The position numbers were made by a program, and so were the translations under genes. A stretch of DNA of 64,000 nucleotides from IMG/VR virus record IMGVR_UViG_3300041411_000178, positions 124,001-188,000 of that record; one strand, written 5' to 3'. Under the pieces are notes generated by a model. It did not search any database. It saw only the letters and a list, made by a program, of their open reading frames with translations, and was not told the DNA's origin. Below are positions 10,269 to 60,598 of the stretch, in pieces. Numbering within the stretch: the stretch's first letter is position 1; each line of letters begins with the position of its first letter.

Positions 10269-13200
10269 ATGCATTTCCCTATTCTCCGTGAATATCAAGA
10301 GGACCTTGAAGGGCGTAATCCGGAAAACAAAATTACGGACGAGCCTAAGTCCACTCCAGCTGGTATCTGGACGCGGATCATTGTTCCTGACCATGCACCA
10401 TTCTTCACCAAGTCGTTGACGGTCAAAGCACCCAACGGCCAGCCTCTTGACCTGGGTGTGCATTACCAGATCTTCAGCATCATGCCACGTCTCACTGACC
10501 TGGCGGCTCAACCAGTGGCGTGTTTCATTGAGTTGCTGGATGAGAACATCACCGATGTACTGCTCGACTACCACGTTGTGGGTGAGTACTCGTTGATTGA
10601 CAACCGCATGCTGCAAATGATCTTTTCGGCTGTCAATGACGATCGTCCAGTGTTCTGGGAAAACCTCAAGAACAAACCGGTTGTCTTCCCACCGGACCTG
10701 CACAGCCATAGTCTGATCCGTACCACGATCTGCTGGCAGGACACGCTGGAAGTCATGGACCTCTACCTGGCCATGAAAGAGGCTAACGGTCGCGAGCCTA
10801 CCCAGATTCGTATCGACCACTTCTTCGACCTCCTGACGCACTACATCAACGTCTACAGCGATATGTTGACTGAGTTCTTGACCCGCCACATGCGGACCAA
10901 TAACGAACACGGTTTGACGGCAGCTCAGGTGCAGTTGGAAAAGGTGGACAACTTCGAAACCGCTAACAGTGGTAACGTGTTGCAGGCGCGTAGCGATATG
11001 CACCTGACCCCTCAAGGGTTGGAAACCATTATCGAGACCTTTGGTTTCGACAGCTCGCAATACCTGAAGACCGGTCTGTTGCCGATCTCGCGGTTTGGTA
11101 ACACCAACTTCATCCCTGCCAACATCGACGGTTCGTTTGAAGGCTTCGGTGGGTTCAGTGAGACAGCGGCTATCACGCTGGAGTCTGATGGTTCGATGGC
11201 GTACTTGTGGAACCGTTTCGATGGCCGTACCACGGGACTGTACTACTCAGTGCTGACGGATTCTGAAGACCAGGCCAACGGCAAGCTGTTGTACACGGGC
11301 TACAAGTACGTCCACCCTCGTATCGCTATCGATGGCGCTAACGTTAACCTGATTGCTCAAGGCAGCGGTGAAGATGTTATCCTGGTCGGTGACAACCAGA
11401 AAGAACTGTACTACATCGGGGTAACCAACGGGTCTCTGGACCCAGCGAAACACGTGTACTCGCCGATCAACTTGCGAGCTCTTGTTAGTGCCATCTACAA
11501 CAACCCCGGGCCAAGAGCGGTGAGCTTACTGTTCCCGTTCATCAACATTGCGTTGATTGGCCCGTGGATCTACATCTTCCACACGGCCTCTACGGGTACC
11601 CCTGTTGACTTCCCGCAACTTGGGATGGACATGCGGTTTAAGTTCTTCTACCGTGTAGCGTTGGCGGATGTAAAAGCACAGATCCCCGTTACGGCAACTC
11701 GTCAAAACATTACATTCCAGGATGCTGAAGGAGTGCAGTGGAATAACTCCCCGTACTTCCGCTGGTGTGATCGTGTAGTTAACGGTAGTGGTGATGTGGT
11801 TAAGTGCTTGTTCCCGTTTGTTCAGCCTCCTAACGGCCTGGTCAGTTTCTATCGGTCGGCAGTTACGTTGGTAGCAGAAAACCCATCGGTTCCGGGTCAG
11901 TATGCCATGAAGTTCTTGGGAGCGTTCTACGCTGCCTTGACAGGGGCTACGCTTAACCAGCAGTTCGACTACGTTCCGGAGTTGAATTACAACTTCAACC
12001 CGAACACGGGTGTCCTGTCGCTGACTTCCAAGACGAACATCTTCGCGGTTGACTTTTCCAAAAGCAACCCAAAGGCTGGCTACGAGCAGAACGGGATGAT
12101 GTACGCCTCGGTCTTCTCGTATGCTGGACAGGGTGGCAACGTCTTGGCGGATGGTCGCTACGCAGCATCTGGTTCGCCAGGTTACGCCGGTTTCCCACGA
12201 TTGGGCGTCGTGTCTGTTCCTCCGGGTTCTCACGACCGGCATACGACAATCTCCAGGTTGTGGGGTGTGGCCAAGGACTTCACCTCGAAAACTTGGTACG
12301 AGACCCTCACAAGTCCATTGGCGTCGTCGGTTAACCCACGCGCAGTTGCATACGTTCCTGCGGGTGAGTTCTTCGTAGCAGGCGGTCGTGACCAGCAGCT
12401 CTACTCGAAGCTGTTCTACAAGAACATCGCAGGTCGATTTGCGGTAAGGCCTGAGGTAACCAACCTCAACGTTGGGCAGGTGGTATCGCGTCCGTTGACC
12501 GGTGATATCCGCCCGGTGAATGCCTTGACGGGCATGGGATTGGCTACGGTGGTGTTCGCTACACCATATCTGAACCAGTTTGGAGTCGATGTAGGCGATG
12601 GGGCGTTCTGTATGAGCTCCCAAACCAAAAACTTCGACCGCACCAAAGTGGGAACGGCATGGCCAGCTAACACCAACAACCCGAACGATGTGATCCTGAT
12701 CGCCACCCACAACAATCGCATTGAACCGGATGGCACTGTGACCATTGTCCCCACTCTGGAGTTGTTGTATCCAGAGGCAATAGTCAATGCATTGTTCGCT
12801 CAGATCCAGTTCCCTGGAATGGCGACGCGATTCAAGATCATTTCGATCTGCGACCCAACCTACTCAGCCATGTCTGCTCGAGCGGGTTGGCTGCCAGTGT
12901 GTGTGTCGATTCAGTACGCACCTAACGGCGGCAGTGACATCAACACGCTTTACTCGACGTTCATGACTATCCAGCCGACTTATGCTGCCGTTAACGGTCG
13001 CTATCAGGTCACTGGGTTTACCGTGCTCGACATTGTTCACGGTGTGGGTCCGGGTACGGCTGTCTACGACCAGCAACGGATCTACGGCAGCACGGTGAAC
13101 TACGAGACGGCCTCGTCGATGCACTGTCCTATGCGGGTGAACTACCATCTAAATGGTAATAACCTTCAGGTCTACATGGGTTCGGGGATCATGGGCAACA

Positions 13201-13817
13201 CAGCGGGTGATGCCTTCTGTCTGGATTGGTTGTTCAGCTACAACGATCGTAACACTCGTCGTTGGAGTGGGAACACGATGCAACAAACCAGTACGTCGAC
13301 ACCTACCATCTGCAACACCCCTGATAACGGCATTAGTCGTTCCTTCGGGTGGGCTGACTCTACAGGGGGTGCGGCGCTGATTCAGCAAGGGCCGGTTAAC
13401 AATGCCGTCATCGGGTCGGTTTATCCGCAGACGGGTTGGGTGATCTTCTTCAAAACCGATATCAACGTGATCTTCAATGGTCGACCGTTTGTATTGCCGG
13501 CGGGTTCCATTGACTTGCGTGATATCGATCCGGCTCCACAGTTCAAAACGTTCTACATTTATGCGTTCTTGCGAGACGGTGTGGCGCAGTATGAGGTCAC
13601 CACTCTCAAGCGGCTGGAAAGTCAGTACCAGTTGTGGGTCGGTCGGGTTACCACGAATGCCAGTCAGATTCTTACTATTGACCGGTACAACGTGATCGCC
13701 ATGAACGGCCACCGCATCAGTGAGCTTAAACGCGGTAACTCCATTCCAGCTTCGTCTGGTCTGGTCAATGAGGAAGGACAAATCCCTTGGTTCTACCAGA
13801 GTGAAATCCTTCCTTAA
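10269..13817 (+). CDS. Tail fibre/baseplate protein (phiKZ gp131/gp145/gp146-like family), 1182 aa
   Basis: N-terminal IVPDHAPFF, HGLTAAQVQLEKVDNF fibre motif, GSFEG..DGR..GLY segment, C-terminal LPAGSIDLRDIDP..FYIY..GNSIPASSG domain. Confidence 0.8.
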   Translation: MHFPILREYQEDLEGRNPENKITDEPKSTPAGIWTRIIVPDHAPFFTKSLTVKAPNGQPLDLGVHYQIFSIMPRLTDLAAQPVACFIELLDENITDVLLDYHVVGEYSLIDNRMLQMIFSAVNDDRPVFWENLKNKPVVFPPDLHSHSLIRTTICWQDTLEVMDLYLAMKEANGREPTQIRIDHFFDLLTHYINVYSDMLTEFLTRHMRTNNEHGLTAAQVQLEKVDNFETANSGNVLQARSDMHLTPQGLETIIETFGFDSSQYLKTGLLPISRFGNTNFIPANIDGSFEGFGGFSETAAITLESDGSMAYLWNRFDGRTTGLYYSVLTDSEDQANGKLLYTGYKYVHPRIAIDGANVNLIAQGSGEDVILVGDNQKELYYIGVTNGSLDPAKHVYSPINLRALVSAIYNNPGPRAVSLLFPFINIALIGPWIYIFHTASTGTPVDFPQLGMDMRFKFFYRVALADVKAQIPVTATRQNITFQDAEGVQWNNSPYFRWCDRVVNGSGDVVKCLFPFVQPPNGLVSFYRSAVTLVAENPSVPGQYAMKFLGAFYAALTGATLNQQFDYVPELNYNFNPNTGVLSLTSKTNIFAVDFSKSNPKAGYEQNGMMYASVFSYAGQGGNVLADGRYAASGSPGYAGFPRLGVVSVPPGSHDRHTTISRLWGVAKDFTSKTWYETLTSPLASSVNPRAVAYVPAGEFFVAGGRDQQLYSKLFYKNIAGRFAVRPEVTNLNVGQVVSRPLTGDIRPVNALTGMGLATVVFATPYLNQFGVDVGDGAFCMSSQTKNFDRTKVGTAWPANTNNPNDVILIATHNNRIEPDGTVTIVPTLELLYPEAIVNALFAQIQFPGMATRFKIISICDPTYSAMSARAGWLPVCVSIQYAPNGGSDINTLYSTFMTIQPTYAAVNGRYQVTGFTVLDIVHGVGPGTAVYDQQRIYGSTVNYETASSMHCPMRVNYHLNGNNLQVYMGSGIMGNTAGDAFCLDWLFSYNDRNTRRWSGNTMQQTSTSTPTICNTPDNGISRSFGWADSTGGAALIQQGPVNNAVIGSVYPQTGWVIFFKTDINVIFNGRPFVLPAGSIDLRDIDPAPQFKTFYIYAFLRDGVAQYEVTTLKRLESQYQLWVGRVTTNASQILTIDRYNVIAMNGHRISELKRGNSIPASSGLVNEEGQIPWFYQSEILP

Positions 13818-13833
13818 CACTTAGGTCCGGATA

Positions 13834-13868
13834 GCCGGGGAGTATTCCTCCCTGGCGTCCTTTCTTTT
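13834..13868 (+). terminator. Intrinsic terminator
   Basis: GCCGGGGAG-tattc-CTCCCTGGC followed by a T-rich tract. Confidence 0.6.
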
Positions 13869-13884
13869 GAATAAGGTTAAAGTG

Positions 13885-16800
13885 ATGGATTCCATTCCGC
13901 TCTTAGTGTTTGACATCCGTGGTCTCAATCCTGTCAACACCATCCCCGGCGAAAAGATCCCACTCAAGGATAAGACCTTGAACTGGCTGATCCCTAACGG
14001 GGCCCCTTTCTTTAACGAACCCGGTCTGCTGGTGGTTCGTAACCAAGCGGGTGGTATTCTCACCCGTGACCGTGACTACTACGTTGAAGGTGAGTTCGTT
14101 CCTTTCTGCGAGATCACTGGTCGTTCCATTTGTACTTTTATCCGTGTCTCCGACGCCATCCTGGCTGCCAACGAATTTGTTACCGTTGACTACCAGAGTA
14201 TCGGTGCCTGGTTTGTACCCCGCAACAACCTCCAAGACTGGTTGGACCAGATGCACCGCGGCAAGACTCCGATTCCGTGGAGCAAGGTGTTCTTTGTTCC
14301 ACCAACCCTGCCGCCAGAGTACCACACTCACAACATCAAAACCGAAATCATGGACTGGTATGATTTCACCTACTTCTTCGCTCAGCTGGAAGGTATCCGC
14401 AGTACTCGGGATCCTGACTTCGATGACAAGTTGACTGCGGCAGTAGAAGACGCCTACAACAAGTTGTATGCAGCACGGGATACTCAACTCGGTATTCTGC
14501 AAGCACACGACAAGAACTACAACAACCCTCATGGTGCCGACAAGTTCGACATTGTGATGGGTAACCACGATAACTACCCTACCGCTACCCTTGCACAGGA
14601 CCTGGCAGGCGATAGGAGCGATCTTCTCAGTACACCCCATGGCGTCGTAGCCCTGGCGAAGAGTTACGTCCCAGACACCGATAAGGCGATGCTGGCGGGT
14701 ATCTTCCCCATCAGTTCGTACAGCGGTGAATCCTTTCTGCCACCGAACATTAGTGGTTCGTTTGAAGGGATGGGTCAACAGACCGAGTGTTCAGGCATCT
14801 GCCTGGAACCAAGCGGCTTGATGATGGTGCTGTCTAACCACAACGACGGCCGTACACGTGGTTTGTACTTCTCTGTTATTGAGAACTACAACCGAGACAA
14901 CATCCGGGTTACCTACAGCAACTACAAATATCGACCACCGGCTTTGACAGCGATCGGTATCGACGTAGACCGCATTATTGCGGGCAGCGGTAACAAGGTC
15001 ATCATGACGGGCGTGAACGGGACCAACGATTGGTTCATCTGTTTGACCAACGGTTCGTTTGATCCAGGTGGTCATGCTTACGTTCGCTGCAACATGAGTG
15101 CTATCACGGCGTTCTTTGGTTCGCCTTACGGCAACGCTCCAGTGTTTGGTCGCAATGACCAGGCCACTATTCACCACATGGGCACGTACCTCGTACTGGT
15201 GCAGGCTTATGTGGACAACGGTATTCCGAAGAGCCGGTTCTACCGCGTTCGTACCGCTGATGTCGTTAACGGCTTGGGCGTTACGTGGGAAGCTGTTCCG
15301 CTTACCTACCAGGACTGGGACGGCACTCAGTACAGCGGTGTGCTGGATTTTCAAGCACAAGCTGTCTTCAAGGATGGCAACAACAAGATCACTCGGTTTG
15401 GCCGGTTTACCTGCCAGCAGCCAATTGATTGGGTATCTATCCTGCGCCGCGATTTGAACTTGTCCTGGCCAGTGACAGGAGGAGGTGGCAACTACTACTT
15501 CCACACGCTTCAGTACTTCCACATGGTCTATTACGACCGCCCTGTGGATCCGCTGTTTGTTCACATCTTGCCAGGGATTACAGAGATGTACTATCTCTTC
15601 AATCCGGCTAACGGTGCAATGGCAAGGCAGGGCAAGTCACCGGCGATTACGCTCGATTTCTTGAACATGACCCCGGCCAATGAAGAATTGGGTATTCGTC
15701 AATATCGCCACGTCTATAACCAATTGGTCGCGTATCAACAACCGTCGACGGTGTTGCTCTCAACCGGTGAACTAGTGTCGACGTGTGTGTTTGAAGGTGT
15801 AGCGGAGTTCCCTTGCCGTATCAATACGCTCAAGATGCAAGGAATCACCAACGCTGAGCAGTGGATGTCCAGGATGATGGACAGCGACACCACAGCAGTG
15901 GCGCGTAATGTGCTTCACGTTCCGTCGGTGCAACCAGCGACAAGGAACGGTGTGTACACGTCCAGCATGTCGTTCGAAGCTGACGGTGAAGTGTTTGCTG
16001 CTGCTGACATGTCAACACCTGATCTGTTGCGTAAGGTGTTCTTCCGCAAGGTAAGCGGCGGGTATGCAATCCGAGATGGCGTTAACAACCTGACCCTGGG
16101 CCCGAACATGTACTCTCGCCCACTGACTACCGAGATCTATTCAACCAACTTAACCCGTGTCGACGGTATGTTGGGGATCACTGGTACGGGTGCAGAACTG
16201 GCAGCGGCTGGGGTGGATCAGGGTAGTGGTTCGGCTAGCTTCTGTGGTTACTCCAGTCTTTACCCAGCAAGCCAGCATTTACCACAGTGCCCAGAGCTGC
16301 GTGCACCGGCCGGCGGTAACGTTTTGGTCTCTTTCCCACGGACGTACACCAAGTCGCTGGATACGATCAACAAGGTGGCAACCTACTCGGCAACCAGCTT
16401 CTATGGTTTCCGTCAGAACGTCATCGACCAGATCAGAGCGTTAACCGGTAATGCCAGCAAGTGGTCATTCACGGTTAACCATCTGGGTGCGGAGAACGGT
16501 GGGATGTTCCGTGGTTTAAATCACTCGGTGGTCATGGTCAACTGGATTGTTGAGGGTACTGGGCGTTTCCGTTCTCGGGTGTTGATCGGCACTCCTGCTG
16601 TTGAGGCGCCGAATGCAAACCATCCGGGTGTGTACCTCATCACGGCCTTTAACTGGGTGTCTGCGCCTGCTGATGTCTCCACTTGCCCTTGGGCAGTGCT
16701 GCAAGGCTACGAGCAGTGGCAGAAATTGGACACCATCTACGTGGCTAAGCCGTTGTTGACAGCGTATCGCGATGGTAACTACATCAAGATCCTGATCACG

Positions 16801-17487
16801 TCCGGCTATGAGCATGTGGTGGCAACGTCTCGTCAAGTACCAGTCTGTCTCTTTGACCTGAACCTGGGTAACAGCCAGATTGAAAACCTGGCAGTAGGTT
16901 CGGTTGCTCGAGATCGAGGGGACCCAGCTGTTATGTGGCCGGGTGTGGGTATGACGGATCTCAGTGTCACAAACCAGGATGGTTTCGACGGCAAGTTGAT
17001 CACGCAGACGTTGTTCCCATACACCTACACGGGTGGTGGCGCGGCGATTCACCTGAAGACAGGGGTCGGTTACATTATCCCTACGTCGGTGTATCCGGAA
17101 ATTGGCTGGCTGCTGTTTATCCAGGACAACATCCGGATGATGATCAACGGGACGGCTTACTCTATCCAGGGTGGCACCATCGACCTGCGGGACATCGATC
17201 CAGCGCCTCAGAACAAAACGTTTTACATGTACGCAACAATCGAGGATGAAACTCCTAAGTATCTGTTGTCGTCAGTACAGCTGCGTAAGAGCGGTTCTCT
17301 GCTGCGGGTAGCGACCATCGTTACCAACGATAAACAGATCTTGACCATCACTCGTGAACAACCGTTTATGGTGGGCGATCTGCTGCTGAGCTATACCCGT
17401 GAAGGTGGGACGATTCCTATGTCCGCGGGCTACCCTCAGGATGAAGGCTTGTTTGTATTCCTTCATCAAGGTGAGTTGTTACCTTAA
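13885..17487 (+). CDS. Tail fibre/baseplate protein, paralogue of the upstream gene (about 1200 aa)
   Basis: Same architecture: LIPNGAPFF, GSFEGMG..DGRTRGLY, C-terminal GGTIDLRDIDPAPQNKTFYMY..GGTIPMSAG. ATG 13885 preferred over TTG 13867. Confidence 0.8.
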   Translation: MDSIPLLVFDIRGLNPVNTIPGEKIPLKDKTLNWLIPNGAPFFNEPGLLVVRNQAGGILTRDRDYYVEGEFVPFCEITGRSICTFIRVSDAILAANEFVTVDYQSIGAWFVPRNNLQDWLDQMHRGKTPIPWSKVFFVPPTLPPEYHTHNIKTEIMDWYDFTYFFAQLEGIRSTRDPDFDDKLTAAVEDAYNKLYAARDTQLGILQAHDKNYNNPHGADKFDIVMGNHDNYPTATLAQDLAGDRSDLLSTPHGVVALAKSYVPDTDKAMLAGIFPISSYSGESFLPPNISGSFEGMGQQTECSGICLEPSGLMMVLSNHNDGRTRGLYFSVIENYNRDNIRVTYSNYKYRPPALTAIGIDVDRIIAGSGNKVIMTGVNGTNDWFICLTNGSFDPGGHAYVRCNMSAITAFFGSPYGNAPVFGRNDQATIHHMGTYLVLVQAYVDNGIPKSRFYRVRTADVVNGLGVTWEAVPLTYQDWDGTQYSGVLDFQAQAVFKDGNNKITRFGRFTCQQPIDWVSILRRDLNLSWPVTGGGGNYYFHTLQYFHMVYYDRPVDPLFVHILPGITEMYYLFNPANGAMARQGKSPAITLDFLNMTPANEELGIRQYRHVYNQLVAYQQPSTVLLSTGELVSTCVFEGVAEFPCRINTLKMQGITNAEQWMSRMMDSDTTAVARNVLHVPSVQPATRNGVYTSSMSFEADGEVFAAADMSTPDLLRKVFFRKVSGGYAIRDGVNNLTLGPNMYSRPLTTEIYSTNLTRVDGMLGITGTGAELAAAGVDQGSGSASFCGYSSLYPASQHLPQCPELRAPAGGNVLVSFPRTYTKSLDTINKVATYSATSFYGFRQNVIDQIRALTGNASKWSFTVNHLGAENGGMFRGLNHSVVMVNWIVEGTGRFRSRVLIGTPAVEAPNANHPGVYLITAFNWVSAPADVSTCPWAVLQGYEQWQKLDTIYVAKPLLTAYRDGNYIKILITSGYEHVVATSRQVPVCLFDLNLGNSQIENLAVGSVARDRGDPAVMWPGVGMTDLSVTNQDGFDGKLITQTLFPYTYTGGGAAIHLKTGVGYIIPTSVYPEIGWLLFIQDNIRMMINGTAYSIQGGTIDLRDIDPAPQNKTFYMYATIEDETPKYLLSSVQLRKSGSLLRVATIVTNDKQILTITREQPFMVGDLLLSYTREGGTIPMSAGYPQDEGLFVFLHQGELLP

Positions 17488-46670: not shown

Positions 46671-47138
46671 ATGTCTAAAGTTGCAGAGCTGGTTATCCGC
46701 GAATATCCGATGGAAGTTATTGCCGCTGATACCATGGAAGATCTGTTGGGTCTGTTCGAACAATTGATCCGTTTCGAAGATGCACTCGTTAACCTGGACG
46801 TACACAAAGATCCTCTCGCTATGGCCACGACCATGGATGAGATCTTGCTTATGGTTGATCGTTGCGCCATGGCTTACATCGGTGATGACCCTGTAGCCTT
46901 CCTGATGATCGACAAGGGCGAACCTTACGCTATCGGTTCTCTGTTCGTGGCCGAAGAACACCGTGGCCAGGGTATCGGGGAACTGTTGGTCAACATGCTG
47001 CGCGATTACCACCCCAACAACGACCTCACCGTGAGCTGCCATAAAGGTAACACCCGTGCACTGGCCTTTTACGAGCGCCTGGGTTTCGTGTTCACCGAGA
47101 CCGACCTGATCATGAAAGGTGTGCTCAAAGCAGTTTGA
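46671..47138 (+). CDS. GNAT-family acetyltransferase
   Basis: Motif A LFVAEEHRGQGIGELLV and motif B NTRALAFYERLGF. Confidence 0.92.
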   Translation: MSKVAELVIREYPMEVIAADTMEDLLGLFEQLIRFEDALVNLDVHKDPLAMATTMDEILLMVDRCAMAYIGDDPVAFLMIDKGEPYAIGSLFVAEEHRGQGIGELLVNMLRDYHPNNDLTVSCHKGNTRALAFYERLGFVFTETDLIMKGVLKAV

Positions 47139-47207: not shown

Positions 47208-48863
47208 ATGACTTTGAAATCGACTGGGTACGTACCTCCAATGCCTACACTGGCGATGCTCGCTGATAACGGCGGCATTGTAACTGTCAACCCGGACTGG
47301 TGTGACTGGTACGAACAAGTGTTTAACGAACCTGCTGGCGCCGGCTATGTCAAAGGGCGCGAGATCATGAACCAGGTTGATCAGTCGTACTCCGAACTGC
47401 TCAGCATCCGTAGCGAGGCCATGAAGAGTGCGATCCACTCGATGATCTCCAATGATCCAAACCGTCCTACCGTGCGCTTCAAAAGCATTGCAGAGGCCGA
47501 GAAGTCGTTCAAACTCTCCGGCAAGCACGCAATGGACTTCGACAAAGAAGAACAAGTGTTCACGTTTGACGGCTACTTCAGCGTCAGTGACATGGAAGCC
47601 ATCCTGTTCATCCGTCGTGCGGAAGAACTGATTGACAAAGCCAAGGAACGCTTTCCGGGTTTCTCCGACTGCGCTACTGGGAGCTACAAAGAGCTGGACA
47701 TCAATCAGTTGATGCAGGTCATGCAGCCATCTTTGTCGAGAACGGACATTGATTCCGAGATTTTCGCTACTCCTGTAGCCGAATCGCCAAATCGCGCGTA
47801 CATGTTCCCTGACGCCAAAGCCAAAGCTTCTCCGATGGCCGAGCAGTTCAACTCTGTTGTTGAAGCACACGCAACGCTGGCGGAATCCGGTATCCTGCGT
47901 CAGAACGTGATCCGCACGCCCGGCGTAAACAATCTGGTACTAGACGGGTACTTCACCCCGAAAGATCTGGAAGCGCTGCTGTACCTGTACCGCAACAACG
48001 ATCCGATGGTGTTCCCTGAAAAGGATGCCAACGGTCTGCCAAAGGACAGTCCCGCGGGTGATAAGCTGAACCGCAAGACCTTCATGGAACTGCTGGGTGT
48101 TACGCCTGAAACCAGCAGCGACGAAGTTGCGGAGAAACTCCGTGCAGCACGCCTTGTTCTGGAAGCAAATCTTACCGGACCTGTTGCAGGCCAATATTTA
48201 GACGGCCTGGGTAAGTTGTACGACGATGCTCTGGAACACCCAAGTTCGGCTAAAGCTCTTCTTCGTCCTACCGGCGATGATTTTGAGAAGAAGCTGCATG
48301 CGGAGATTGTTGGCGGTAGTCTGCGAGAGATCCCCGACGAACTGCCTACCGGTAACGCTGTCCTCAACCGGTTGATAACGGAAGGCGGCGGTCTGCGTCG
48401 TGGTGAATGGGCGGGTGAAGCTGCTGCCCGTACTGATATCAACCGCACGTCTATCGTGGGCGGTACTCGTATTCACTGCTTCGAAGAGGGTGACGATGAC
48501 TTCCCAATGATGACCGCTCTGATCAAGAAGATTGAAACCTTCGAAGAGCAGTTCGGTGGGTTGTCTTTGGCTGACTTCCGCGCGCAAGTAGACGCACCAT
48601 GGGCTGAAGGCGGTGTTGCCTACTTCAAGAAGGAAGACGGTCACTTCAGCCTGGTGTTCGAAAAGAACGAGGTGGTCGTCTCGCTGTTCTCGTTCAAAGT
48701 GGCTGAACACTCCAACCCTCCGGGTCAGATTGTCTTGTGCGAACACGCGCCAAGCCTGGTCAACTACACCACTATCTCCAGCTTCTTTGATCTGTTCATC
48801 AGCATCACGCCTGAGCAGGTAAAGGAAGCTAAAGACCGAGCTATCGAGAAACACGGTCAGTAA
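47208..48863 (+). CDS. Mosaic hypothetical protein (551 aa) with an internal duplicated domain
   Basis: GGGAG RBS; repeats FDGYFSVSDMEAILFIRR / LDGYFTPKDLEALLYLYR. Confidence 0.75.
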   Translation: MTLKSTGYVPPMPTLAMLADNGGIVTVNPDWCDWYEQVFNEPAGAGYVKGREIMNQVDQSYSELLSIRSEAMKSAIHSMISNDPNRPTVRFKSIAEAEKSFKLSGKHAMDFDKEEQVFTFDGYFSVSDMEAILFIRRAEELIDKAKERFPGFSDCATGSYKELDINQLMQVMQPSLSRTDIDSEIFATPVAESPNRAYMFPDAKAKASPMAEQFNSVVEAHATLAESGILRQNVIRTPGVNNLVLDGYFTPKDLEALLYLYRNNDPMVFPEKDANGLPKDSPAGDKLNRKTFMELLGVTPETSSDEVAEKLRAARLVLEANLTGPVAGQYLDGLGKLYDDALEHPSSAKALLRPTGDDFEKKLHAEIVGGSLREIPDELPTGNAVLNRLITEGGGLRRGEWAGEAAARTDINRTSIVGGTRIHCFEEGDDDFPMMTALIKKIETFEEQFGGLSLADFRAQVDAPWAEGGVAYFKKEDGHFSLVFEKNEVVVSLFSFKVAEHSNPPGQIVLCEHAPSLVNYTTISSFFDLFISITPEQVKEAKDRAIEKHGQ

Positions 48864-52641: not shown

Positions 52642-53283
52642 ATGGATAACTATAAAGACGGAACGATAGCGTTTGACCGTATTACAGTTTTGGGGAAGGA
52701 CTTTGTTGCGGGGACGTACAAGGACGACTTGGCTGTCTATCAATATGCCTTTGATGTTAAGCCGTTTGTAGCAGGCGGGAAGAAAAAGAAGAAGAACGCC
52801 CCAGAGAAGTATGACTATCAATGGGAAGGCTTTTTCAACATGATGGTCAACAATACCCGCATTCGACTGCATCCGGTTCTGAATGACTACGGGTTGTTCG
52901 AGATGGAAAGAAAGCTTGAGCTGCTCAAAGAGAAGATGCAGTTCTTTGTGAAGGAACTCAAGACACGCCGTAAGACACCTGCTAAGGGCGATCGTTACGA
53001 CAAGCAGTGGCTGAACAAACCGGATACCCCTTACTCAGGGCATGTGCACCTGACCATGCACAAGGACGGCGGTGGCAACCTTTCGGTAGCCGACTGTCAT
53101 AAGTCCATCCACTGGTGGGTGGACTGTTACTTAGATCCGAGTGGCAAACCCGTCTACGACGAGTACTACGAAAAGTCGTTGAAGTCGATTGAAGAGTTTG
53201 CACGTGGGTTAGGCAAGGCTTGCAAGGCAATCCAAGAATTGCGCAAGTTCTTTGCCCGTGAACTCGAAAGCTCTCAAGGTTAA
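52642..53283 (+). CDS. Hypothetical basic protein (213 aa)
   Basis: AGGAG RBS. Confidence 0.7.
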   Translation: MDNYKDGTIAFDRITVLGKDFVAGTYKDDLAVYQYAFDVKPFVAGGKKKKKNAPEKYDYQWEGFFNMMVNNTRIRLHPVLNDYGLFEMERKLELLKEKMQFFVKELKTRRKTPAKGDRYDKQWLNKPDTPYSGHVHLTMHKDGGGNLSVADCHKSIHWWVDCYLDPSGKPVYDEYYEKSLKSIEEFARGLGKACKAIQELRKFFARELESSQG

Positions 53284-53288
53284 GAGAG

Positions 53289-53305
53289 TTTCAAACCTAC
53301 ATTAT
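53289..53305 (+). promoter_or_regulatory. Phage early-type promoter motif (copy 7)
   Basis: TTTCAAACCTACATTAT upstream of the chaperonin. Confidence 0.7.
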
Positions 53306-53353
53306 TACCCTGAGATACATTGTTTATATCAACCCAGCTACGGAGATTCTTCC

Positions 53354-55024
53354 ATGTACATGCAACTCTCTAATAACCGCAGTCATGGTGATATGCAGGT
53401 CCGCACTACTCAAGATGTTGTTGAGGATGTAATGACCAACGTCCATGACGCGGTGGTTGCCACCATGGGTCCTAACGGCAAGCTTTCAGCCATTACTATC
53501 GGTACCTCGGTGAAGGTTACCAAAGACGGTGTAACAGTCGCAAAGTCGCTGAAGTTTGTTAACCCATTCGAAGAAGCTGTAAACCGCATCATTCTGGAAC
53601 CGGCAATCAAGACCGATGACGAATGCGGTGACGGTACCACCACCACCATTCTGTTGACCGGTGAACTGTACAGCCTGTACTCGCAGTTCCCTACTTACCG
53701 TGAACGCAAGTTCATCGACAAGCTGTGCAACAAAACGATCGAAGAACTCAGCCGTATGTCGATCGCTGTGAACAACGACAGTCCAGAGTTGTACAGTCTG
53801 GCCCTGACGTCCTCTAACGGCGATGAGAAGCTGGCTGACGTCATTACCGACATCTATCACCAGGCTGCCGGTAAATACCCTGAGATCGAGCTCAAGGAAG
53901 GTCTGGGCGGGCAAGACCAGGTTGTGCGTTCCAACGGTCTGCCGGTGAACCTGATCTACAGCAACCCGTCGTTCTCCAAGAACGGCAACGGTACTGCGTC
54001 GGAATTCACGCTCTTCGTCCCAATCGTTATCGATGACAACATCCGTAACGTAGATCCGCAGGTGCTGATCGGTCTGCTGAAAAAGGTAATGGACAGCGTT
54101 GGCAGCGAAGCTACCTTCCTGCTCATTGCTCGTTCGTTCGACAACCCGATCAACAGCCTGATCCTGCAACTGAACAACCAACTGAAACGTCAGGCGTTCA
54201 TCTGCGCACAGACCAACTTCGGTGGTTCGGTTGGTACGCTGTTGATGCAGGACCTCTCGATCATGCTGGGCACCAGTATGGTTAAGGTGTTCTCGGACAT
54301 CGTGACCGTCGAACCGCGTTTTTGCGTCGACAAGCTGACCATTGGTTCCACCCGGTCGGTATTCGAAGCGACTTCCCTCGAGACCACTGACCGTATTGCC
54401 GCACAGGTGAAATCGATCGAAGAAGAACTTAACAGCTACGAGCGTGGTGAGCGTTTCAGCATGCGTGCGCGTTTCAATGAGAAACGTCTGCGTGATCTGA
54501 AGGGCGAACTGATCACCATCTTCGTGGGCGGTGAAACTCAGTCCGAGATCAAGGAACGTATCGACCGTTTCGAAGACGTGTCGAAGGCTGTCAAATCAGC
54601 ACTGGTGAACGGCATCCTGCCGGGTGTAGGTACTGCACTGATCACCGCTGGTGTGTTCGCCATGCAAAGTCTGGAAGATGAAATCGATACCGATCCTGTC
54701 TACGACAAGATCATCAAGGCTTTCATCGAAGTGATCTTTGCACAGTACACCCTCCTGATGGGTCCTCTGATGTCGTTCAAGGGTACCGCCGAAGAAAAGG
54801 CTACACTCATGGAAGGTGTCTTGGACATGGACAACCCTGCACCGTTCACTGTTATGAACATGCGGGATAACACCACCGGTACTCCTCGTGACCTGGGGAT
54901 CTACGACACGGCTTACGCCTCTATCACTGCATTGCGTGGTGGCATGCAGACAGCCAAGATCCTCGCCAGCCTCGATAGCATCTTGATCGGGGACAAACTG
55001 GCTGCGGTTCATATCCAGTCTTAA
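53354..55024 (+). CDS. groEL: Phage GroEL-like chaperonin
   Basis: TMGPNG, VTKDGVTVAKSL, DECGDGTTTT ATP-binding motif, FVGGETQSEIKE..RFED, GILPGVG, GIYD. Start moved to ATG 53354 (GGAG RBS). Confidence 0.93.
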   Translation: MYMQLSNNRSHGDMQVRTTQDVVEDVMTNVHDAVVATMGPNGKLSAITIGTSVKVTKDGVTVAKSLKFVNPFEEAVNRIILEPAIKTDDECGDGTTTTILLTGELYSLYSQFPTYRERKFIDKLCNKTIEELSRMSIAVNNDSPELYSLALTSSNGDEKLADVITDIYHQAAGKYPEIELKEGLGGQDQVVRSNGLPVNLIYSNPSFSKNGNGTASEFTLFVPIVIDDNIRNVDPQVLIGLLKKVMDSVGSEATFLLIARSFDNPINSLILQLNNQLKRQAFICAQTNFGGSVGTLLMQDLSIMLGTSMVKVFSDIVTVEPRFCVDKLTIGSTRSVFEATSLETTDRIAAQVKSIEEELNSYERGERFSMRARFNEKRLRDLKGELITIFVGGETQSEIKERIDRFEDVSKAVKSALVNGILPGVGTALITAGVFAMQSLEDEIDTDPVYDKIIKAFIEVIFAQYTLLMGPLMSFKGTAEEKATLMEGVLDMDNPAPFTVMNMRDNTTGTPRDLGIYDTAYASITALRGGMQTAKILASLDSILIGDKLAAVHIQS

Positions 55025-57510: not shown

Positions 57511-57559
57511 CCGTAATCTCCCGGGCGTTGGTTGCCTGGGGGATTATGGTTTCTTTTTT
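57511..57559 (+). terminator. Intrinsic terminator
   Basis: CCGTAATCTCCCGGGCG..TGCCTGGGGGATTATGG plus T tract. Confidence 0.7.
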
Positions 57560-57606
57560 ATTTGTACCGCTGTAACTTTGTAAAGACTACTAACAAGGAG
57601 TTCCAC

Positions 57607-59187
57607 ATGAATACCCCAATAAACAAAGAGGCCACTTACATGCCCGGGCCTGTTGGTAAAACCTTCACCGAAGAAGAGATGCTGAAAATAAACCCCCATG
57701 TCAGCAAGCTCGCGCCCAACCTCATGGACGGTTATGTTTTCGTTTGGAACAAAGAGCGCGACCTGTACGAGAACATCGGGACTAAGGCTTCAGTGTTGGG
57801 GAGTAACACCCCACATGAATACATTTGCCCTGTTTCTTTTACCATGAAAGGGAATTGGGAAAGTGATGACCCACTTCCTGAGGAAGACGCACAGGTCGGT
57901 GATTGCTGGATCCGGGAAAAACACTTCTGGGCAAGAACTTCCCAGAATATTTGGAAAGACTACGGGGATGTCAGTAACGTAGGTGCTATCCAGTACTGCT
58001 TCCTGGAAGACAACCCACCACCGGCACCAAAGCCTGTGATTTTCCGCAACGTTGGTAACCACGAACTTACAGCCACCATCATCGGTGATTTCGTCAACCG
58101 TGAGATCGCCGATGCACATGCTCCCAAAGTTGGCCACGCAGGGGAAGCATATATTGCCGACAACACGGTCTTTCTTTGGGATGTATTTAACGGGACAGGT
58201 TGGATAGAAAGCGGTAAAGTTGGGGAAATTTGGGAACCGCTTCCTCCGCCTACATCGGGACTTGCTGAACTTTTCAGAACCCTGCCGCGTTCCAGTATGT
58301 TAGGTCATGACCGTCACAAGGATCAACGCTCCAAAGAGCAAATCCTGCAAAGCCATTTCCATGATGATGTCAGAGCCGGGTACGGTGGGACCTTCGATCA
58401 ATGGTGCAGTCAGAACGGTGATCTTAATGCCGTTCTTCGCGAAGCGGCTGGCAAAGACCCACAAGGTCTTGAACACCTGGTAGCCGTGCACAATCTCGAA
58501 GAGCAGCGGGTGCGTATGCACCGCCGTGACCTGTTGGCAGACGCCAAGGCTCATCCATCCCTGGACGATGCTGAGAAACTGCTGGCAGGGGCTCTGGAGA
58601 CGCTTGAGGGCGAAGAAAGTGATGCTGCTTTCAAGGCTCTCGATGCGTTGAAGAAAGTCAAGAAAGATATGCGTCGTAAGCGTCGTAACTTCTGGCTTTT
58701 TGTCATCACGTTCTGGGCTATCGTGGGTACGGGTGTTTACTTCCTGGGTAAGTGGTTGTCTACCCAGGTTGTTACCGGTCGCTATACCGTTCCAAAGACG
58801 TGCTCGGCTCCATTCGGCCCCGGCGTTATTCAGGGCATGCGTTACTACGACTACAGCTACAAGTCGTTGTTCGGTGTGCACATGACACTGGAGAGTACTG
58901 TCAGGGAAAGCACGATCGTTACCACGAACGGCCAAGAGTTCTCCATCTTCGGTCTATCGCCTCGTAACGAAGAGTCTGACGTACCCGGAGAGCCGATGGC
59001 TGATCGAGTGCTGAAGGCTGCTGAGGTGGAAGTAGAAACTGCTCCTAAGCCTCCTAAGGGCAAATGGTGGCGCATGAACATCTGGACCAGCGACAAAGGC
59101 ACACAGCCAATGAAGCCAGCCGAGCTGTATTTGTTCGCGTCTGAGAAGTATACAACCATGGTCGCTTATAAGGACTTCTGTAAATGA
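57607..59187 (+). CDS. Single-pass membrane protein with fibre-like N-terminal repeats
   Basis: ATG 57607 after AAGGAG; three Trp-containing repeats; RRKRRN followed by TM FWLFVITFWAIVGTGVYFLG. Confidence 0.75.
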   Translation: MNTPINKEATYMPGPVGKTFTEEEMLKINPHVSKLAPNLMDGYVFVWNKERDLYENIGTKASVLGSNTPHEYICPVSFTMKGNWESDDPLPEEDAQVGDCWIREKHFWARTSQNIWKDYGDVSNVGAIQYCFLEDNPPPAPKPVIFRNVGNHELTATIIGDFVNREIADAHAPKVGHAGEAYIADNTVFLWDVFNGTGWIESGKVGEIWEPLPPPTSGLAELFRTLPRSSMLGHDRHKDQRSKEQILQSHFHDDVRAGYGGTFDQWCSQNGDLNAVLREAAGKDPQGLEHLVAVHNLEEQRVRMHRRDLLADAKAHPSLDDAEKLLAGALETLEGEESDAAFKALDALKKVKKDMRRKRRNFWLFVITFWAIVGTGVYFLGKWLSTQVVTGRYTVPKTCSAPFGPGVIQGMRYYDYSYKSLFGVHMTLESTVRESTIVTTNGQEFSIFGLSPRNEESDVPGEPMADRVLKAAEVEVETAPKPPKGKWWRMNIWTSDKGTQPMKPAELYLFASEKYTTMVAYKDFCK

Positions 59188-59795
59188 AAAGCATCAAGCA
59201 TGTAAACGTAGGGACTGTGGGTCATGTTGACCACGGCCGCATGTTGCAGTACACCGGCAAACGTGGGTACAAAAGCATGGTGGAGAATTATCCCTCCGGC
59301 ATACCGTACCTTACGCGTCGTGTAAATCCATTCGAACCAGAGTGGATCTACTGGTGGGAAGGGTTGATCTACGTGGGCGGTCGGGTTATTCATAACCTGC
59401 GCATCTACGAAGACAAGAAACCACCTGAAGAAGGAGTGATCTGCGATTCGATCTCTCCGACTGAGGGTCGTTCAAAGGAATACGAGCAGATAAAGAAGAT
59501 GCTCGTTTCCAGGATGAACAAAGGTACCTCGGGCAAAGCAATGCCGCCTGAGATTACCTCGGCGATCGAGGACTTCCTCCGACCGACCGGGGTAAAGGTT
59601 AACCCAATACGGATCATGCACGAGTATGAGCGTGACCGTCGTACGGTTATTCCGTCACGTAAGTCGATTCAGTGGGCCATTGAAATGACTCACTGGAAAG
59701 ACAAAGATCTTTTCAAAATCCTGGGTATGGATCAACTGTCCCCAGATCAATTAGCTGACCTAAGGTGGAAACGTACAAATGGACAATCGTCTTAA
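59184..59795 (+). CDS. Hypothetical protein beginning with an EF-Tu G1-like peptide
   Basis: ATGA overlap, AAGGA RBS; residues 6-19 are HVNVGTVGHVDHGR. Confidence 0.7.
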   Translation: MKSIKHVNVGTVGHVDHGRMLQYTGKRGYKSMVENYPSGIPYLTRRVNPFEPEWIYWWEGLIYVGGRVIHNLRIYEDKKPPEEGVICDSISPTEGRSKEYEQIKKMLVSRMNKGTSGKAMPPEITSAIEDFLRPTGVKVNPIRIMHEYERDRRTVIPSRKSIQWAIEMTHWKDKDLFKILGMDQLSPDQLADLRWKRTNGQSS

Positions 59796-59967
59796 GGAAG
59801 AGATGGAACACAACATCGCCTTGTACAAGGAGAACGGCCCTAACCCAGGCGATCGCTTTGCCAAAGTGCAAGGTATCGGGTTAGTGGTAATGAAATCCAA
59901 AACACTGCCTTCGGGCTTGATCATTGAACCTTTTGAAAACGTAAGGAACGAACATGGGCCAGAGTAA
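59779..59967 (+). CDS. Hypothetical protein
   Basis: 62-aa ORF, AGGTGG RBS, overlapping both neighbours. Confidence 0.5.
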   Translation: MDNRLKEEMEHNIALYKENGPNPGDRFAKVQGIGLVVMKSKTLPSGLIIEPFENVRNEHGPE

Positions 59968-60598
59968 TAAAACCGGCGAGCGTAACCCGAACAATCCGCC
60001 GAGCCCTAACAAAGGACGCAGCATGGTTCCGGTGAATCACAAGCTGAAGTACACCGAAGAAGATATGGTCAAGGCCATGGAATTTGCCAAGCGTAATGCG
60101 CGTGGTAACTTCATGAAAGAACTCGGTCTGACCGAATTGAACTCCGGTATCGGTAGCACGCCGTCTTCGAACTGGTTTGCTAAGGGCGAACTGGAGGAGT
60201 TCCCTGAGCTGGTTAATCGTGATCGTGCAAGCCTGTGTCTGGGTCACCTTACCGATGACGAATTGGCCAGCCTGGTCTTCATGCAGGGTGACATCGATAA
60301 AGACACCGACATGCGTTTGTCGATTGCTGCCATGCAGTCTGGACAGCAGTACTACTCGAAGATCGCGGCGGTAACGGGCGGTAAAGAACGCATCCGCTGG
60401 CTGTCACGTCACCTGGAACTGTCCCTTCAACGTCAACGTACACAACGTACCACGATTTGGAACTACATTCTGGATACGTACGGCGAGTGCGGGGGTGAAG
60501 CTTCGATTCTCGAGGCGTGTGAAAAGCTGGGGTTGTCGAAGGAGTACGCGATGGCGCGCATGCATCCAGAACAATCGGTCGTTAAGGAGGCACAATGA
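59954..60598 (+). CDS. Hypothetical protein
   Basis: AAGGA RBS; 214 aa. Confidence 0.7.
   Translation: MGQSNKTGERNPNNPPSPNKGRSMVPVNHKLKYTEEDMVKAMEFAKRNARGNFMKELGLTELNSGIGSTPSSNWFAKGELEEFPELVNRDRASLCLGHLTDDELASLVFMQGDIDKDTDMRLSIAAMQSGQQYYSKIAAVTGGKERIRWLSRHLELSLQRQRTQRTTIWNYILDTYGECGGEASILEACEKLGLSKEYAMARMHPEQSVVKEAQ

What the first reader, a model, noticed from the sequence alone, without database searches (positions are those of the whole stretch)
59184..59240. Isolated EF-Tu G1/P-loop peptide at the N-terminus of an otherwise unrelated phage protein (possible EF-Tu mimic or decoy)
Seen: residues 6-19 are HVNVGTVGHVDHGR. Known: bacterial EF-Tu reads HVNVGTIGHVDHGK(TT), so 12 of 14 are identical and both changes are conservative. 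Seen: similarity stops right there, with no GKT and no G2-G5 motifs in the remaining ~185 aa, so this is not a GTPase. The DNA is synonymously diverged from the E. coli tuf codons as I recall them, which suggests retention at the protein level. Inference: the peptide could titrate a host factor or defence sensor that binds EF-Tu (EF-Tu is the known target of the Lit protease and Doc kinase) or dock the protein on the translation apparatus.
Basis: partly seen in the sequence, partly recalled or inferred. Interest (0 to 1): 0.78.

Follow-up and report, generated by a model that had tools for sequence, protein, structure and literature searches.

The report
EF-Tu strand/P-loop peptide kept by phages
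A 203-residue jumbo-phage protein carries a 14-residue copy of the first strand and phosphate loop of the host translation factor EF-Tu; selection has kept the peptide intact in every relative and in unrelated proteins of other phages, yet the protein is not a GTPase and what the peptide binds is unknown.

Summary
ORF 59184-59795 (+) starts MKSIK, then HVNVGTVGHVDHGR at residues 6-19 (59199-59240). That is 12 of 14 identical to enterobacterial EF-Tu. Similarity ends there, and no other G motif exists in any family member.

The peptide is translated and strongly selected. N-V-G-T-[VI]-G-H-[VI]-D is invariant in 22 homologues down to 26% identity, while each of those residues uses 2-4 synonymous codons. 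It supplies 7 of the family's 11 invariant columns.

The family is tiny: 10 clusters among 1.84 billion representatives. It is confined to chaperonin-encoding phages of about 215-233 kb, always overlapping an upstream membrane-protein gene by 4 nt.

The peptide is not always N-terminal. It also occurs on unrelated scaffolds: a small protein of SPN3US-like phages, and small ORFs of Vibrio, Pseudomonas, Serratia and Aggregatibacter phages. Equally conserved EF-Tu segments (residues 62-97 and 205-240) were found only in host-contaminated records.

My best reading is a portable, tuf-derived interaction peptide on a flexible arm, with an unidentified partner. The specific Lit/Doc decoy idea does not fit, because those enzymes act at other EF-Tu sites and strand β1 is buried in folded EF-Tu. 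Structure and complex predictions were uninformative.

The parts
59184..59795 (+). Gene for the 203-aa protein (family 1). It has an N-terminal arm with the EF-Tu peptide, a predicted three-strand beta-meander and a helical C-terminal half.
   Evidence: ORF list; 16 homologues at 84-40% identity plus distant ones; AF2 secondary structure, at low confidence.
59199..59240 (+). EF-Tu-derived peptide HVNVGTVGHVDHGR (residues 6-19). It corresponds to EF-Tu strand beta1 plus the first part of the P-loop, with the Walker-A Lys replaced by Arg.
59205..59231 (+). Invariant core N8-D16, N-V-G-T-[VI]-G-H-[VI]-D. Seven of its nine positions are invariant in the 22-sequence alignment.
   Evidence: Invariant columns in alignments A1, A2 and A4; 2-4 synonymous codons per invariant residue across 10 loci.
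59241..59258 (+). xLQYTG element (residues 20-25). It is conserved but mobile: directly after the peptide in form A, but before the peptide (7 to about 40 residues upstream) inside an N-terminal extension in form B.
59337..59396 (+). Conserved block P52-Y71 (PEWIYWW.GLIYVGGRVIH...), predicted as a beta-meander.
   Evidence: Invariant P52, E53, G60, V64, G66, R67; strands 55-58, 61-64, 67-71 in the AF2 model.
59634..59726 (+). Conserved C-terminal block D151-G181 (DRRTVIPSRK.IQWAIEM..W...L.K..G). It is helical and weakly HTH-like.
   Evidence: Invariant D151, R152, P157, I162; weak HTH_37 hits in 3 members, E 0.086; weak AbiEi hit over residues 115-164, E 0.014.
59170..59174 (+). Shine-Dalgarno-like AAGGA, 9 nt before the ATG at 59184. 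That ATG overlaps the upstream stop codon (ATGA).
57532..59187 (+). Upstream gene for a single-pass membrane protein (open frame of 551 aa; the true start is probably the ATG near 57607). It is translationally coupled to the peptide gene in every relative examined.
   Evidence: In those loci the upstream gene ends 4 nt after the start of the family-1 gene.
53252..55024 (+). Phage GroEL/Cpn60-like chaperonin gene, in conserved synteny about 3.5-4 kb upstream of every family-1 gene whose context could be read.
   Evidence: phrog_5725, E 1.7e-121; PF00118 in L027, L028 and L029.

Best explanation
The gene encodes a conserved accessory protein of a small clade of chaperonin-encoding jumbo phages of about 215-233 kb. 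Residues 6-19 are a piece of bacterial EF-Tu (strand beta1 and the start of the P-loop), captured long ago and kept since by strong purifying selection. The protein is not a GTPase. I think the peptide most likely works as an autonomous, portable interaction module on a flexible N-terminal arm. On this view it binds a partner that recognises this EF-Tu-type strand-loop, probably something in or around the translation apparatus or something that handles non-native EF-Tu. The beta-meander and the helical C-terminal half would then carry the protein-specific activity. Shown: the origin from EF-Tu, the loss of GTPase motifs, selection on the peptide, its portability between scaffolds, and the conserved gene context. 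Inferred: that it acts by binding, that the arm is flexible, and the nature of the partner.
For: 1. The peptide holds 7 of the 11 invariant columns of a 22-member family that diverges to 26% identity, and every invariant residue shows 2-4 synonymous codons. 2. Its position is not fixed. It lies after MKSIK in form A and 24-63 residues inside the protein in form B. The xLQYTG element changes sides, and the HGR tail varies or is missing (HER, HGL, HSR, WGR, WGK, absent). 3. The same peptide sits on unrelated scaffolds. Examples are the 70-110-aa protein downstream of a GNAT gene in Seoulvirus, Machinavirus and Erskinevirus, where H.NVGTIG.V is invariant; the C-terminal end of a 188-aa ORF in L011 and a small ORF in L012; Serratia phage Muldoon, Vibrio phage henriette, Pseudomonas phage Jeremy and Aaphi23 ORF27. 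4. This genome has exactly one peptide-bearing gene and no relative of the SPN3US-type scaffold. SPN3US-like phages have no family-1 relative beyond the peptide. 5. Control: EF-Tu residues 1-36 hit 56 phage-collection records, roughly 35-40 of which are bona fide phages (my count from the organism tallies). Residues 62-97 and 205-240 each hit 18 records, essentially all bacterial or unverified contigs carrying a whole tuf. 6. AF2 gives coil at pLDDT below 50 for residues 1-38 and 40-52. This is weak support, because the alignment is shallow.
Against: No partner was identified. The complex prediction with E. coli EF-Tu and EF-Ts gave score 0.00 and 'no answer'. Strand beta1 is buried in folded EF-Tu (established G-domain structure), so the peptide cannot imitate a native EF-Tu surface. 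The family has fixed V for I and R for K, so it does not copy the host sequence exactly. The low AF2 confidence may only reflect a 21-22-sequence alignment rather than disorder. The capture bias towards the 5' end of tuf could be mutational rather than functional. Some of the phage occurrences may share one capture event: families 1 and 2 share KH for PH and R for K.
Confidence: 0.4

Rival explanations
1. The peptide is an exapted building block. A captured tuf fragment became an integral core strand, or a metal- or ligand-binding loop, of this protein's own fold or active site. Its function would have nothing to do with EF-Tu or EF-Tu's partners.
For: The invariant residues include polar N, T, H and D, which could line a site. 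Other blocks of the protein are conserved as well (P52-R67, D151-I162). The I to V and K to R changes show there is no need to copy the host exactly. Nothing links the protein to translation.
Against: The same peptide persists on several unrelated scaffolds and at N-terminal, internal and C-terminal positions. Its neighbours in the sequence are rearranged within the family itself. Both facts are hard to reconcile with a fixed place in one fold.
Confidence: 0.33
2. The peptide is a decoy or pseudosubstrate that titrates a host defence enzyme or sensor acting on EF-Tu.
For: EF-Tu is a recurrent target or cofactor of defence systems: Lit, the type IV Thoeris caspase and Avs7. The Walker-A Lys is replaced by Arg in both jumbo-phage families, a change of the kind seen in non-modifiable substrate analogues. 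Small EF-Tu N-terminal ORFs lie in accessory regions of other phages, for example the nin region of Aaphi23.
Against: Every known EF-Tu-directed defence activity acts elsewhere: G59-I60, R45/R59, T382, or domains II/III. The protein has no counterpart of those regions. Beta1 is buried in native EF-Tu. No PADLOC or other link was found.
Confidence: 0.12
3. The peptide is a residual nucleotide- or phosphate-binding element. The strand-loop would still bind GTP, GDP, ppGpp or a nucleotide signal, as minimal beta-(P-loop)-alpha fragments can do.
For: Other phage versions keep GK[ST] and part of helix alpha1 (henriette, Jeremy, Aaphi23). The family-2 match extends over EF-Tu positions 3-37.
Against: In this family the second half of the P-loop is the variable part, the Lys and the Ser/Thr are missing, helix alpha1 is absent, and no other G motif exists.
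Confidence: 0.06
4. The peptide is a neutral relic of an accidental capture of host DNA and has no function.
For: 5' fragments of tuf occur sporadically in many phages.
Against: Amino acids are completely conserved while synonymous sites are saturated, across a family at 26-88% identity.
Confidence: 0.02

Closest known systems
Bacterial elongation factor Tu, G domain (Pfam PF00009; NCBIfam TIGR00485)
   Same: Residues 6-19 match EF-Tu residues 11-24 (strand beta1 and the P-loop) at 12 of 14 positions. The match is specific to EF-Tu rather than other translational GTPases.
   Different: There is no Walker-A Lys-Thr, no G2-G5 motifs, and no domain II or III. Scores are far below family thresholds: 12.4 against 26.5 bits for Pfam, 17.5 against 449 bits for NCBIfam.
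Small 'putative elongation factor Tu' proteins of SPN3US-like jumbo phages (phrog_12626; Seoulvirus, Machinavirus, Erskinevirus)
   Same: They carry the same tuf-derived peptide with the same derived features (KH instead of PH before the strand; Arg for the P-loop Lys in most members). They occur as a single copy per genome in enterobacterial jumbo phages.
   Different: They are 70-110 aa on a different scaffold and always lie next to a GNAT acetyltransferase gene. Their match extends into helix alpha1 (EF-Tu positions 3-37). In SPN3US itself the P-loop half has decayed. Only residues 1-19 of the window protein align to them.
Short EF-Tu N-terminal ORFs of other phages (phrog_27465; Vibrio phage henriette gp52, Pseudomonas phage Jeremy, Aaphi23 ORF27, Serratia phage Muldoon gp023)
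   Same: They are an isolated EF-Tu G1 segment with no remainder of the factor.
   Different: Most keep GK[ST/P] and some keep the true EF-Tu N-terminus from residue 1. They are 59-141 aa with no similarity to the window protein outside the peptide. Their functions are equally unknown.
Minimal beta-(P-loop)-alpha phosphate-binding prototypes (engineered 'simple P-loop proteins'; recalled from my own knowledge, not tested here)
   Same: A strand plus a glycine-rich loop taken out of an NTPase context.
   Different: In this family the anion-binding half of the loop and the following helix are not conserved.

Membership tests
Translational GTPase / EF-Tu (PF00009) | G1 Walker A, GxxxxGK[ST] | tested here: not met
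   The motif reads GHVDHGRM. None of the 22 family members matches GxxxxGK[ST].
Translational GTPase / EF-Tu (PF00009) | G3 DxxG and G4 [NT]KxD | tested here: not met
   This protein has no DxxG, and no member has [NT]KxD.
Translational GTPase / EF-Tu (PF00009) | Score above the curated family threshold | tested here: not met
   Pfam 12.4 bits against a cut-off of 26.5; NCBIfam EF-Tu 17.5 bits against 449.
Translational GTPase / EF-Tu (PF00009) | Beta-barrel domains II and III | tested here: not met
   hhalign and hmmsearch --max find only the 14-column match. Residues 20-203 score below the shuffle mean.
phrog_12626 (SPN3US-like small 'putative EF-Tu' protein) | Homology over the whole protein | tested here: not met
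   Only residues 1-19 align.
phrog_12626 (SPN3US-like small 'putative EF-Tu' protein) | Position immediately downstream of the GNAT acetyltransferase gene | tested here: not met
   The GNAT gene lies at window 46671-47138, 12 kb upstream. The gene that follows it is unrelated.
Family 1 (this protein's own family, unnamed) | The peptide plus the P-E-.-I-Y-W / G-L-..-V-.-G-R block plus the D-R-....-P-.-R block | tested here: met
   Alignments A1, A2 and A4.
Family 1 (this protein's own family, unnamed) | Synteny: downstream of the phage Cpn60 gene, with a 4-nt overlap on the upstream membrane-protein gene | tested here: met
   Window, L003, L027/L028 and L029.
Host-mimicking short linear motif | The motif lies in a flexible, indel-rich region | tested here: inconclusive
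   The flanks are indel-rich and rearranged. AF2 gives coil at pLDDT below 50 for residues 1-38 and 40-52, but from a shallow alignment.
Host-mimicking short linear motif | The motif binds a defined partner on its own | not testable with these tools
   The only complex prediction allowed (EF-Tu + EF-Ts) returned 'no answer'.
Decoy substrate of EF-Tu-directed defence enzymes (Lit, Doc, type IV Thoeris caspase) | Contains the EF-Tu site that the enzyme recognises or cuts | tested here: not met
   The sites are G59-I60, R45/R59 and T382 (my own knowledge). The protein has no counterpart of EF-Tu beyond residue 24.

The most novel reading that the evidence does not exclude
Phages of many lineages keep the first strand and P-loop of host EF-Tu as a portable peptide. 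They move it between scaffolds while retaining one copy per genome, because it engages a host process not yet described. That process could be a surveillance, quality-control or defence system that reads non-native or nascent EF-Tu, or the ribosomal GTPase centre through the translational-GTPase-specific His-x-Asp of the loop. The window protein would be the jumbo-phage representative of a new class of host-derived peptide modules.
Probability: 0.25. Interest if true: 0.85.

Novelty: new variant of a known kind. Interest (0 to 1): 0.6.

Why it matters
EF-Tu is the most abundant bacterial protein and a recurrent node of phage-host conflict (Lit, type IV Thoeris, Avs7, Q-beta replicase). Here a 10-residue piece of it is conserved more tightly than anything else in a phage protein. 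The same piece, and no other part of EF-Tu, recurs on unrelated scaffolds in distant phages. GenBank annotators have labelled some of these genes 'putative elongation factor Tu' or 'putative GTPase', which this analysis shows to be wrong. I found no study of their function. If the peptide has an autonomous binding function, finding its partner would reveal a new contact point between phages and the translation apparatus or its surveillance. The experiment is simple: compare the wild-type protein with a peptide mutant.

Tried and rejected
It then gave low-confidence models: P0001 at pLDDT 53 and pTM 0.31, and form B at pLDDT 43. Foldseek against PDB and BFVD returned nothing below E 0.5. The ESM Atlas model of P0006 is poor, pTM 0.21.
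2. Complex. The prediction with E. coli EF-Tu and EF-Ts gave score 0.00 and 'no answer'. It is not evidence either way.
3. Shrunken EF-Tu. By eye, NPF.PEWIYWW.GLIYVGGRV resembled the start of EF-Tu domain II (KPFLLPIEDVF..GTVVTGRV), which would have made the protein a shrunken EF-Tu. This is rejected: hhalign and hmmsearch --max find nothing there, and local alignment is no better than shuffles (p about 0.57).
4. Family-2 homologue after GNAT. The N-terminus of the 551-aa ORF after the GNAT gene (47208-48863) looked like the N-terminus of the SPN3US-type protein. This is rejected: the family-2 profile does not hit it.
5. Capture with tRNA genes. I considered that the fragment rode in with tRNA genes, since tufB follows a tRNA operon. 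There is no tRNA in the window, and the Aaphi23 and henriette copies lie among nin-region or nucleotide-metabolism genes. The idea is not supported as a general explanation, though it cannot be excluded as the original capture route.
6. Nucleic-acid-level feature. Rejected, because synonymous positions vary freely.
7. Paralogues. There are none in the genome.
8. Family libraries and literature. Pfam, PHROGs, NCBIfam, PADLOC and PDB profile searches of the rest of the protein gave nothing significant. Literature searches found no study of these proteins.
Full report
**1. What is in the sequence**

The window is bases 124001-188000 of a 224,004-bp virus record with direct terminal repeats, at about 51% G+C. 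It encodes virion proteins, an NAD-dependent ligase, an SbcC-like protein and a GroEL-like chaperonin.

ORF 59184-59795 (+) encodes 203 residues beginning MKSIKHVNVGTVGHVDHGRMLQYTG.

Several searches show that the match is not chance:
- phmmer of residues 1-25 against all PDB sequences returns EF-Tu chains only at the top, E 4e-5 to 5e-4.
- A family profile aligned to EF-Tu by hhalign gives 94% probability over exactly 14 columns.
- NCBIfam EF-Tu models give E 1.4e-3.

Beyond residue 19 there is nothing:
- Residues 20-203 score below the mean of shuffled sequences against EF-Tu.
- No member of the family has a complete Walker A motif or an [NT]KxD motif.
- Pfam and NCBIfam scores are far below threshold.

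Only 29 of 42 nucleotides match tufA, and 8 of the 12 conserved residues use another codon.

**2. Gene start**

The ATG at 59184 overlaps the stop of the upstream gene (ATGA) and has an AAGGA 9 nt upstream. The internal ATG at M20 has no such context. Thirteen relatives start with the same MK[SG]IKH. Others extend further upstream from the same 4-nt overlap. The peptide is therefore inside the coding region in all of them.

**3. Conservation**

A word-index search found 16 homologues at 84-40% identity. A profile search of 1.84 billion cluster representatives found only 10 clusters in all, so the family is very small.

In the 17-, 21- and 22-sequence alignments the peptide is the best-conserved block. 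With members down to 26% identity included, the invariant columns are N, V, G, T, G, H and D of the peptide plus only four others.

Across ten loci each invariant residue is encoded by 2 to 4 different codons:

| Residue | Codons used |
|---|---|
| Val | GTA, GTC, GTG, GTT |
| Gly | GGA, GGC, GGG, GGT |
| Thr | all four |

This is purifying selection on the amino-acid sequence. It is not conservation of a DNA or RNA element, and it is not recent gene conversion with host tuf.

**4. Anatomy of the family**

There are two forms.
- In form A (this protein) the peptide follows MKSIK and is followed by HGR-xLQYTG-RGY.
- In form B an extension of about 20-60 residues precedes the peptide. It contains the xLQYTG element, which is then missing after the peptide.

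The tail after the invariant Asp varies (HGR, HER, HGL, HSR, WGR, WGK) or is deleted.

Downstream there are two more conserved blocks: a predicted three-strand meander (P52-Y71) and a helical C-terminal block (D151-G181) with faint HTH-like hits.

The gene context is constant even for the most distant members. A Cpn60/GroEL gene comes first, then about five small genes, then a single-pass membrane protein of 312-551 aa, then the family-1 gene overlapping it by 4 nt.

**5. The peptide on other scaffolds**

PHROG profiles 12626 and 27465 hit only residues 1-19. Following that lead gave several unrelated contexts.

- **SPN3US-like jumbo phages.** A 70-110-aa protein sits directly downstream of a GNAT acetyltransferase gene in Seoulvirus, Machinavirus and Erskinevirus. 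It carries PKHVNVGTIGHVDHGRT or a decayed version, and tblastn with it hit 77 records, including motif-only hits in other phages and host contigs.
  - Within it H.NVGTIG.V is invariant, while the P-loop half is free to decay.
  - Its match to EF-Tu covers positions 3-37, E 5e-8, and so includes helix alpha1.
  - Several GenBank records call it 'putative elongation factor Tu' or 'putative GTPase'.
- **IMG/VR scan.** A DNA-pattern scan for the Arg/Ser version of the peptide found only 8 loci, seven of them on contigs of 184-233 kb and one on a 64-kb contig. One has the peptide at the extreme C-terminus of a 188-aa ORF, and another has it in a small ORF.
- **Other phages.** tblastn also found it in Serratia phage Muldoon (near the C-terminus of a 141-aa protein), Vibrio phage henriette (59 aa), Pseudomonas phage Jeremy (92 aa) and the temperate phage Aaphi23 (ORF27, 59 aa, in the nin region, starting with the true EF-Tu N-terminus). 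Hits in Aeromonas, Burkholderia and Shewanella phages were listed but not read.

The window genome has one peptide-bearing gene and no SPN3US-type scaffold. SPN3US-like phages have no family-1 relative. Families 1 and 2 share two derived states: KH instead of PH before the strand, and Arg for the Walker-A Lys. This points to one capture followed by relocation between scaffolds.

**6. Control for specificity**

I ran equal-length tblastn queries from Salmonella EF-Tu against the 50,697-record phage collection.

| EF-Tu residues | Records hit | What the hits are |
|---|---|---|
| 1-36 | 56 | about 35-40 bona fide phages by my count of the organism tallies, the rest host-contaminated records |
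| 62-97 (G3 region) | 18 | almost all bacterial or 'unverified' contigs carrying a whole tuf gene |
| 205-240 (domain II) | 18 | almost all bacterial or 'unverified' contigs carrying a whole tuf gene |

Phages therefore keep the G1 segment of EF-Tu and no other segment.

**7. Mechanism**

Shown: the protein is not a GTPase, and the peptide is selected, translated and portable.

Inferred: a peptide of 10-14 residues that survives changes of scaffold and of position most probably has an autonomous function, which for a peptide means binding.

What it binds is open. By established G-domain structure, beta1 is the central buried strand, so mimicry of a native EF-Tu surface is unlikely. The exposed part is the P-loop, whose His and Asp are the translational-GTPase-specific residues and are exactly the loop residues kept invariant here. 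The nucleotide-binding Gly-Lys-Thr is not kept.

- Lit cuts at G59-I60.
- The type IV Thoeris caspase cuts after R45 and R59.
- Avs7 binds domains II/III.
- Doc phosphorylates T382 (my own knowledge).

The complex prediction with EF-Tu and EF-Ts gave no answer. Both AF2 models were of low confidence, with the N-terminal 50 residues unstructured. Fold searches were empty.

I give 0.40 to the portable interaction-motif reading and 0.33 to an exapted structural or active-site element. The decoy gets 0.12, residual nucleotide binding 0.06 and a neutral relic 0.02.

**8. Comparison and novelty**

The protein is not a member of the EF-Tu family, because four defining features were tested and not met. 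It is not a member of the SPN3US-type small-protein family either.

Its closest relatives in kind are the small 'putative EF-Tu' ORFs scattered in phage genomes. These have been noticed only as mis-annotations; I found no paper on them.

I classify the finding as a new variant of a known kind, namely a host-derived fragment exapted by phages. There is a real chance that it marks an undescribed phage-host interface.

Noticed in passing
window 53252-55024 (+): The phage encodes a GroEL/Cpn60-like chaperonin (phrog_5725, E 1.7e-121). It lies in conserved synteny about 3.5-4 kb upstream of the peptide gene in every relative whose context could be read.
   Followed up: partly
L015:4001-4210 (Salmonella phage SPN3US, ACQ60_gp074) and the loci in alignment A3: A second, unrelated small-protein family carries the same EF-Tu peptide, always just downstream of a GNAT acetyltransferase gene. 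In SPN3US the P-loop half has decayed (GRVAFDD) while H.NVGTIG.V stays invariant. Several GenBank records name it 'putative elongation factor Tu' or 'putative GTPase', which is unwarranted.
   Followed up: partly
L011:178-744 (-), IMGVR_UViG_3300038441_000779: A 188-aa ORF ends exactly with the peptide (...YVNVGTIGHIDHGR, then stop). An overlapping downstream ORF starts MGDKLKYRT, which is reminiscent of the xLQYTG element. This may be a frameshifted or split version of the family. The 469-aa ORF upstream also contains a YVGGKKIH block.
   Followed up: partly
L036:2486-2665 (Aaphi23 ORF27); L031:1522-1701 (Vibrio phage henriette); L032:1495-1773 (Pseudomonas phage Jeremy); L030:1186-1611 (Serratia phage Muldoon): Small ORFs of unrelated phages carry the EF-Tu N-terminus and P-loop only. 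Aaphi23's starts with the authentic MSKEKFERTKP and lies in the nin accessory region.
   Followed up: partly
window 10269-13817 (+) and 13867-17487 (+): Two adjacent paralogous genes of about 1,200 aa (both phrog_3573, with virion or tail-like N-termini). This looks like a tandem duplication of a large structural protein.
   Followed up: no
window 46671-47138 (+): A GNAT acetyltransferase gene (PF00583, E 2e-15). It is followed by an unannotatable 551-aa ORF (47208-48863) rather than by the small EF-Tu-peptide gene seen after the GNAT gene in SPN3US-like phages.
   Followed up: partly
'phages' collection records AFYI01000003/6, AGRM01000003/5, CAKLQF02/CAKLQH02, OR84xxxx 'UNVERIFIED_ORG': The phage collection contains bacterial contigs and host-contaminated assemblies with complete tuf genes. 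They inflate hit counts for host proteins and had to be discounted in the control searches.
   Followed up: yes
P0022 (92 aa, from the representative search): A metagenomic protein consisting of two tandem copies of the EF-Tu N-terminal 45 residues or so, with an intact GKT. It may be an assembly artefact or a duplicated tuf 5' end.
   Followed up: no
window 59779-59967 (+) and 59954-60598 (+): The downstream 62-aa and 214-aa genes are also syntenic across the clade. The 214-aa protein (phrog_36034, unknown function) has a recognisable relative even in the 233-kb contig of L006.
   Followed up: no
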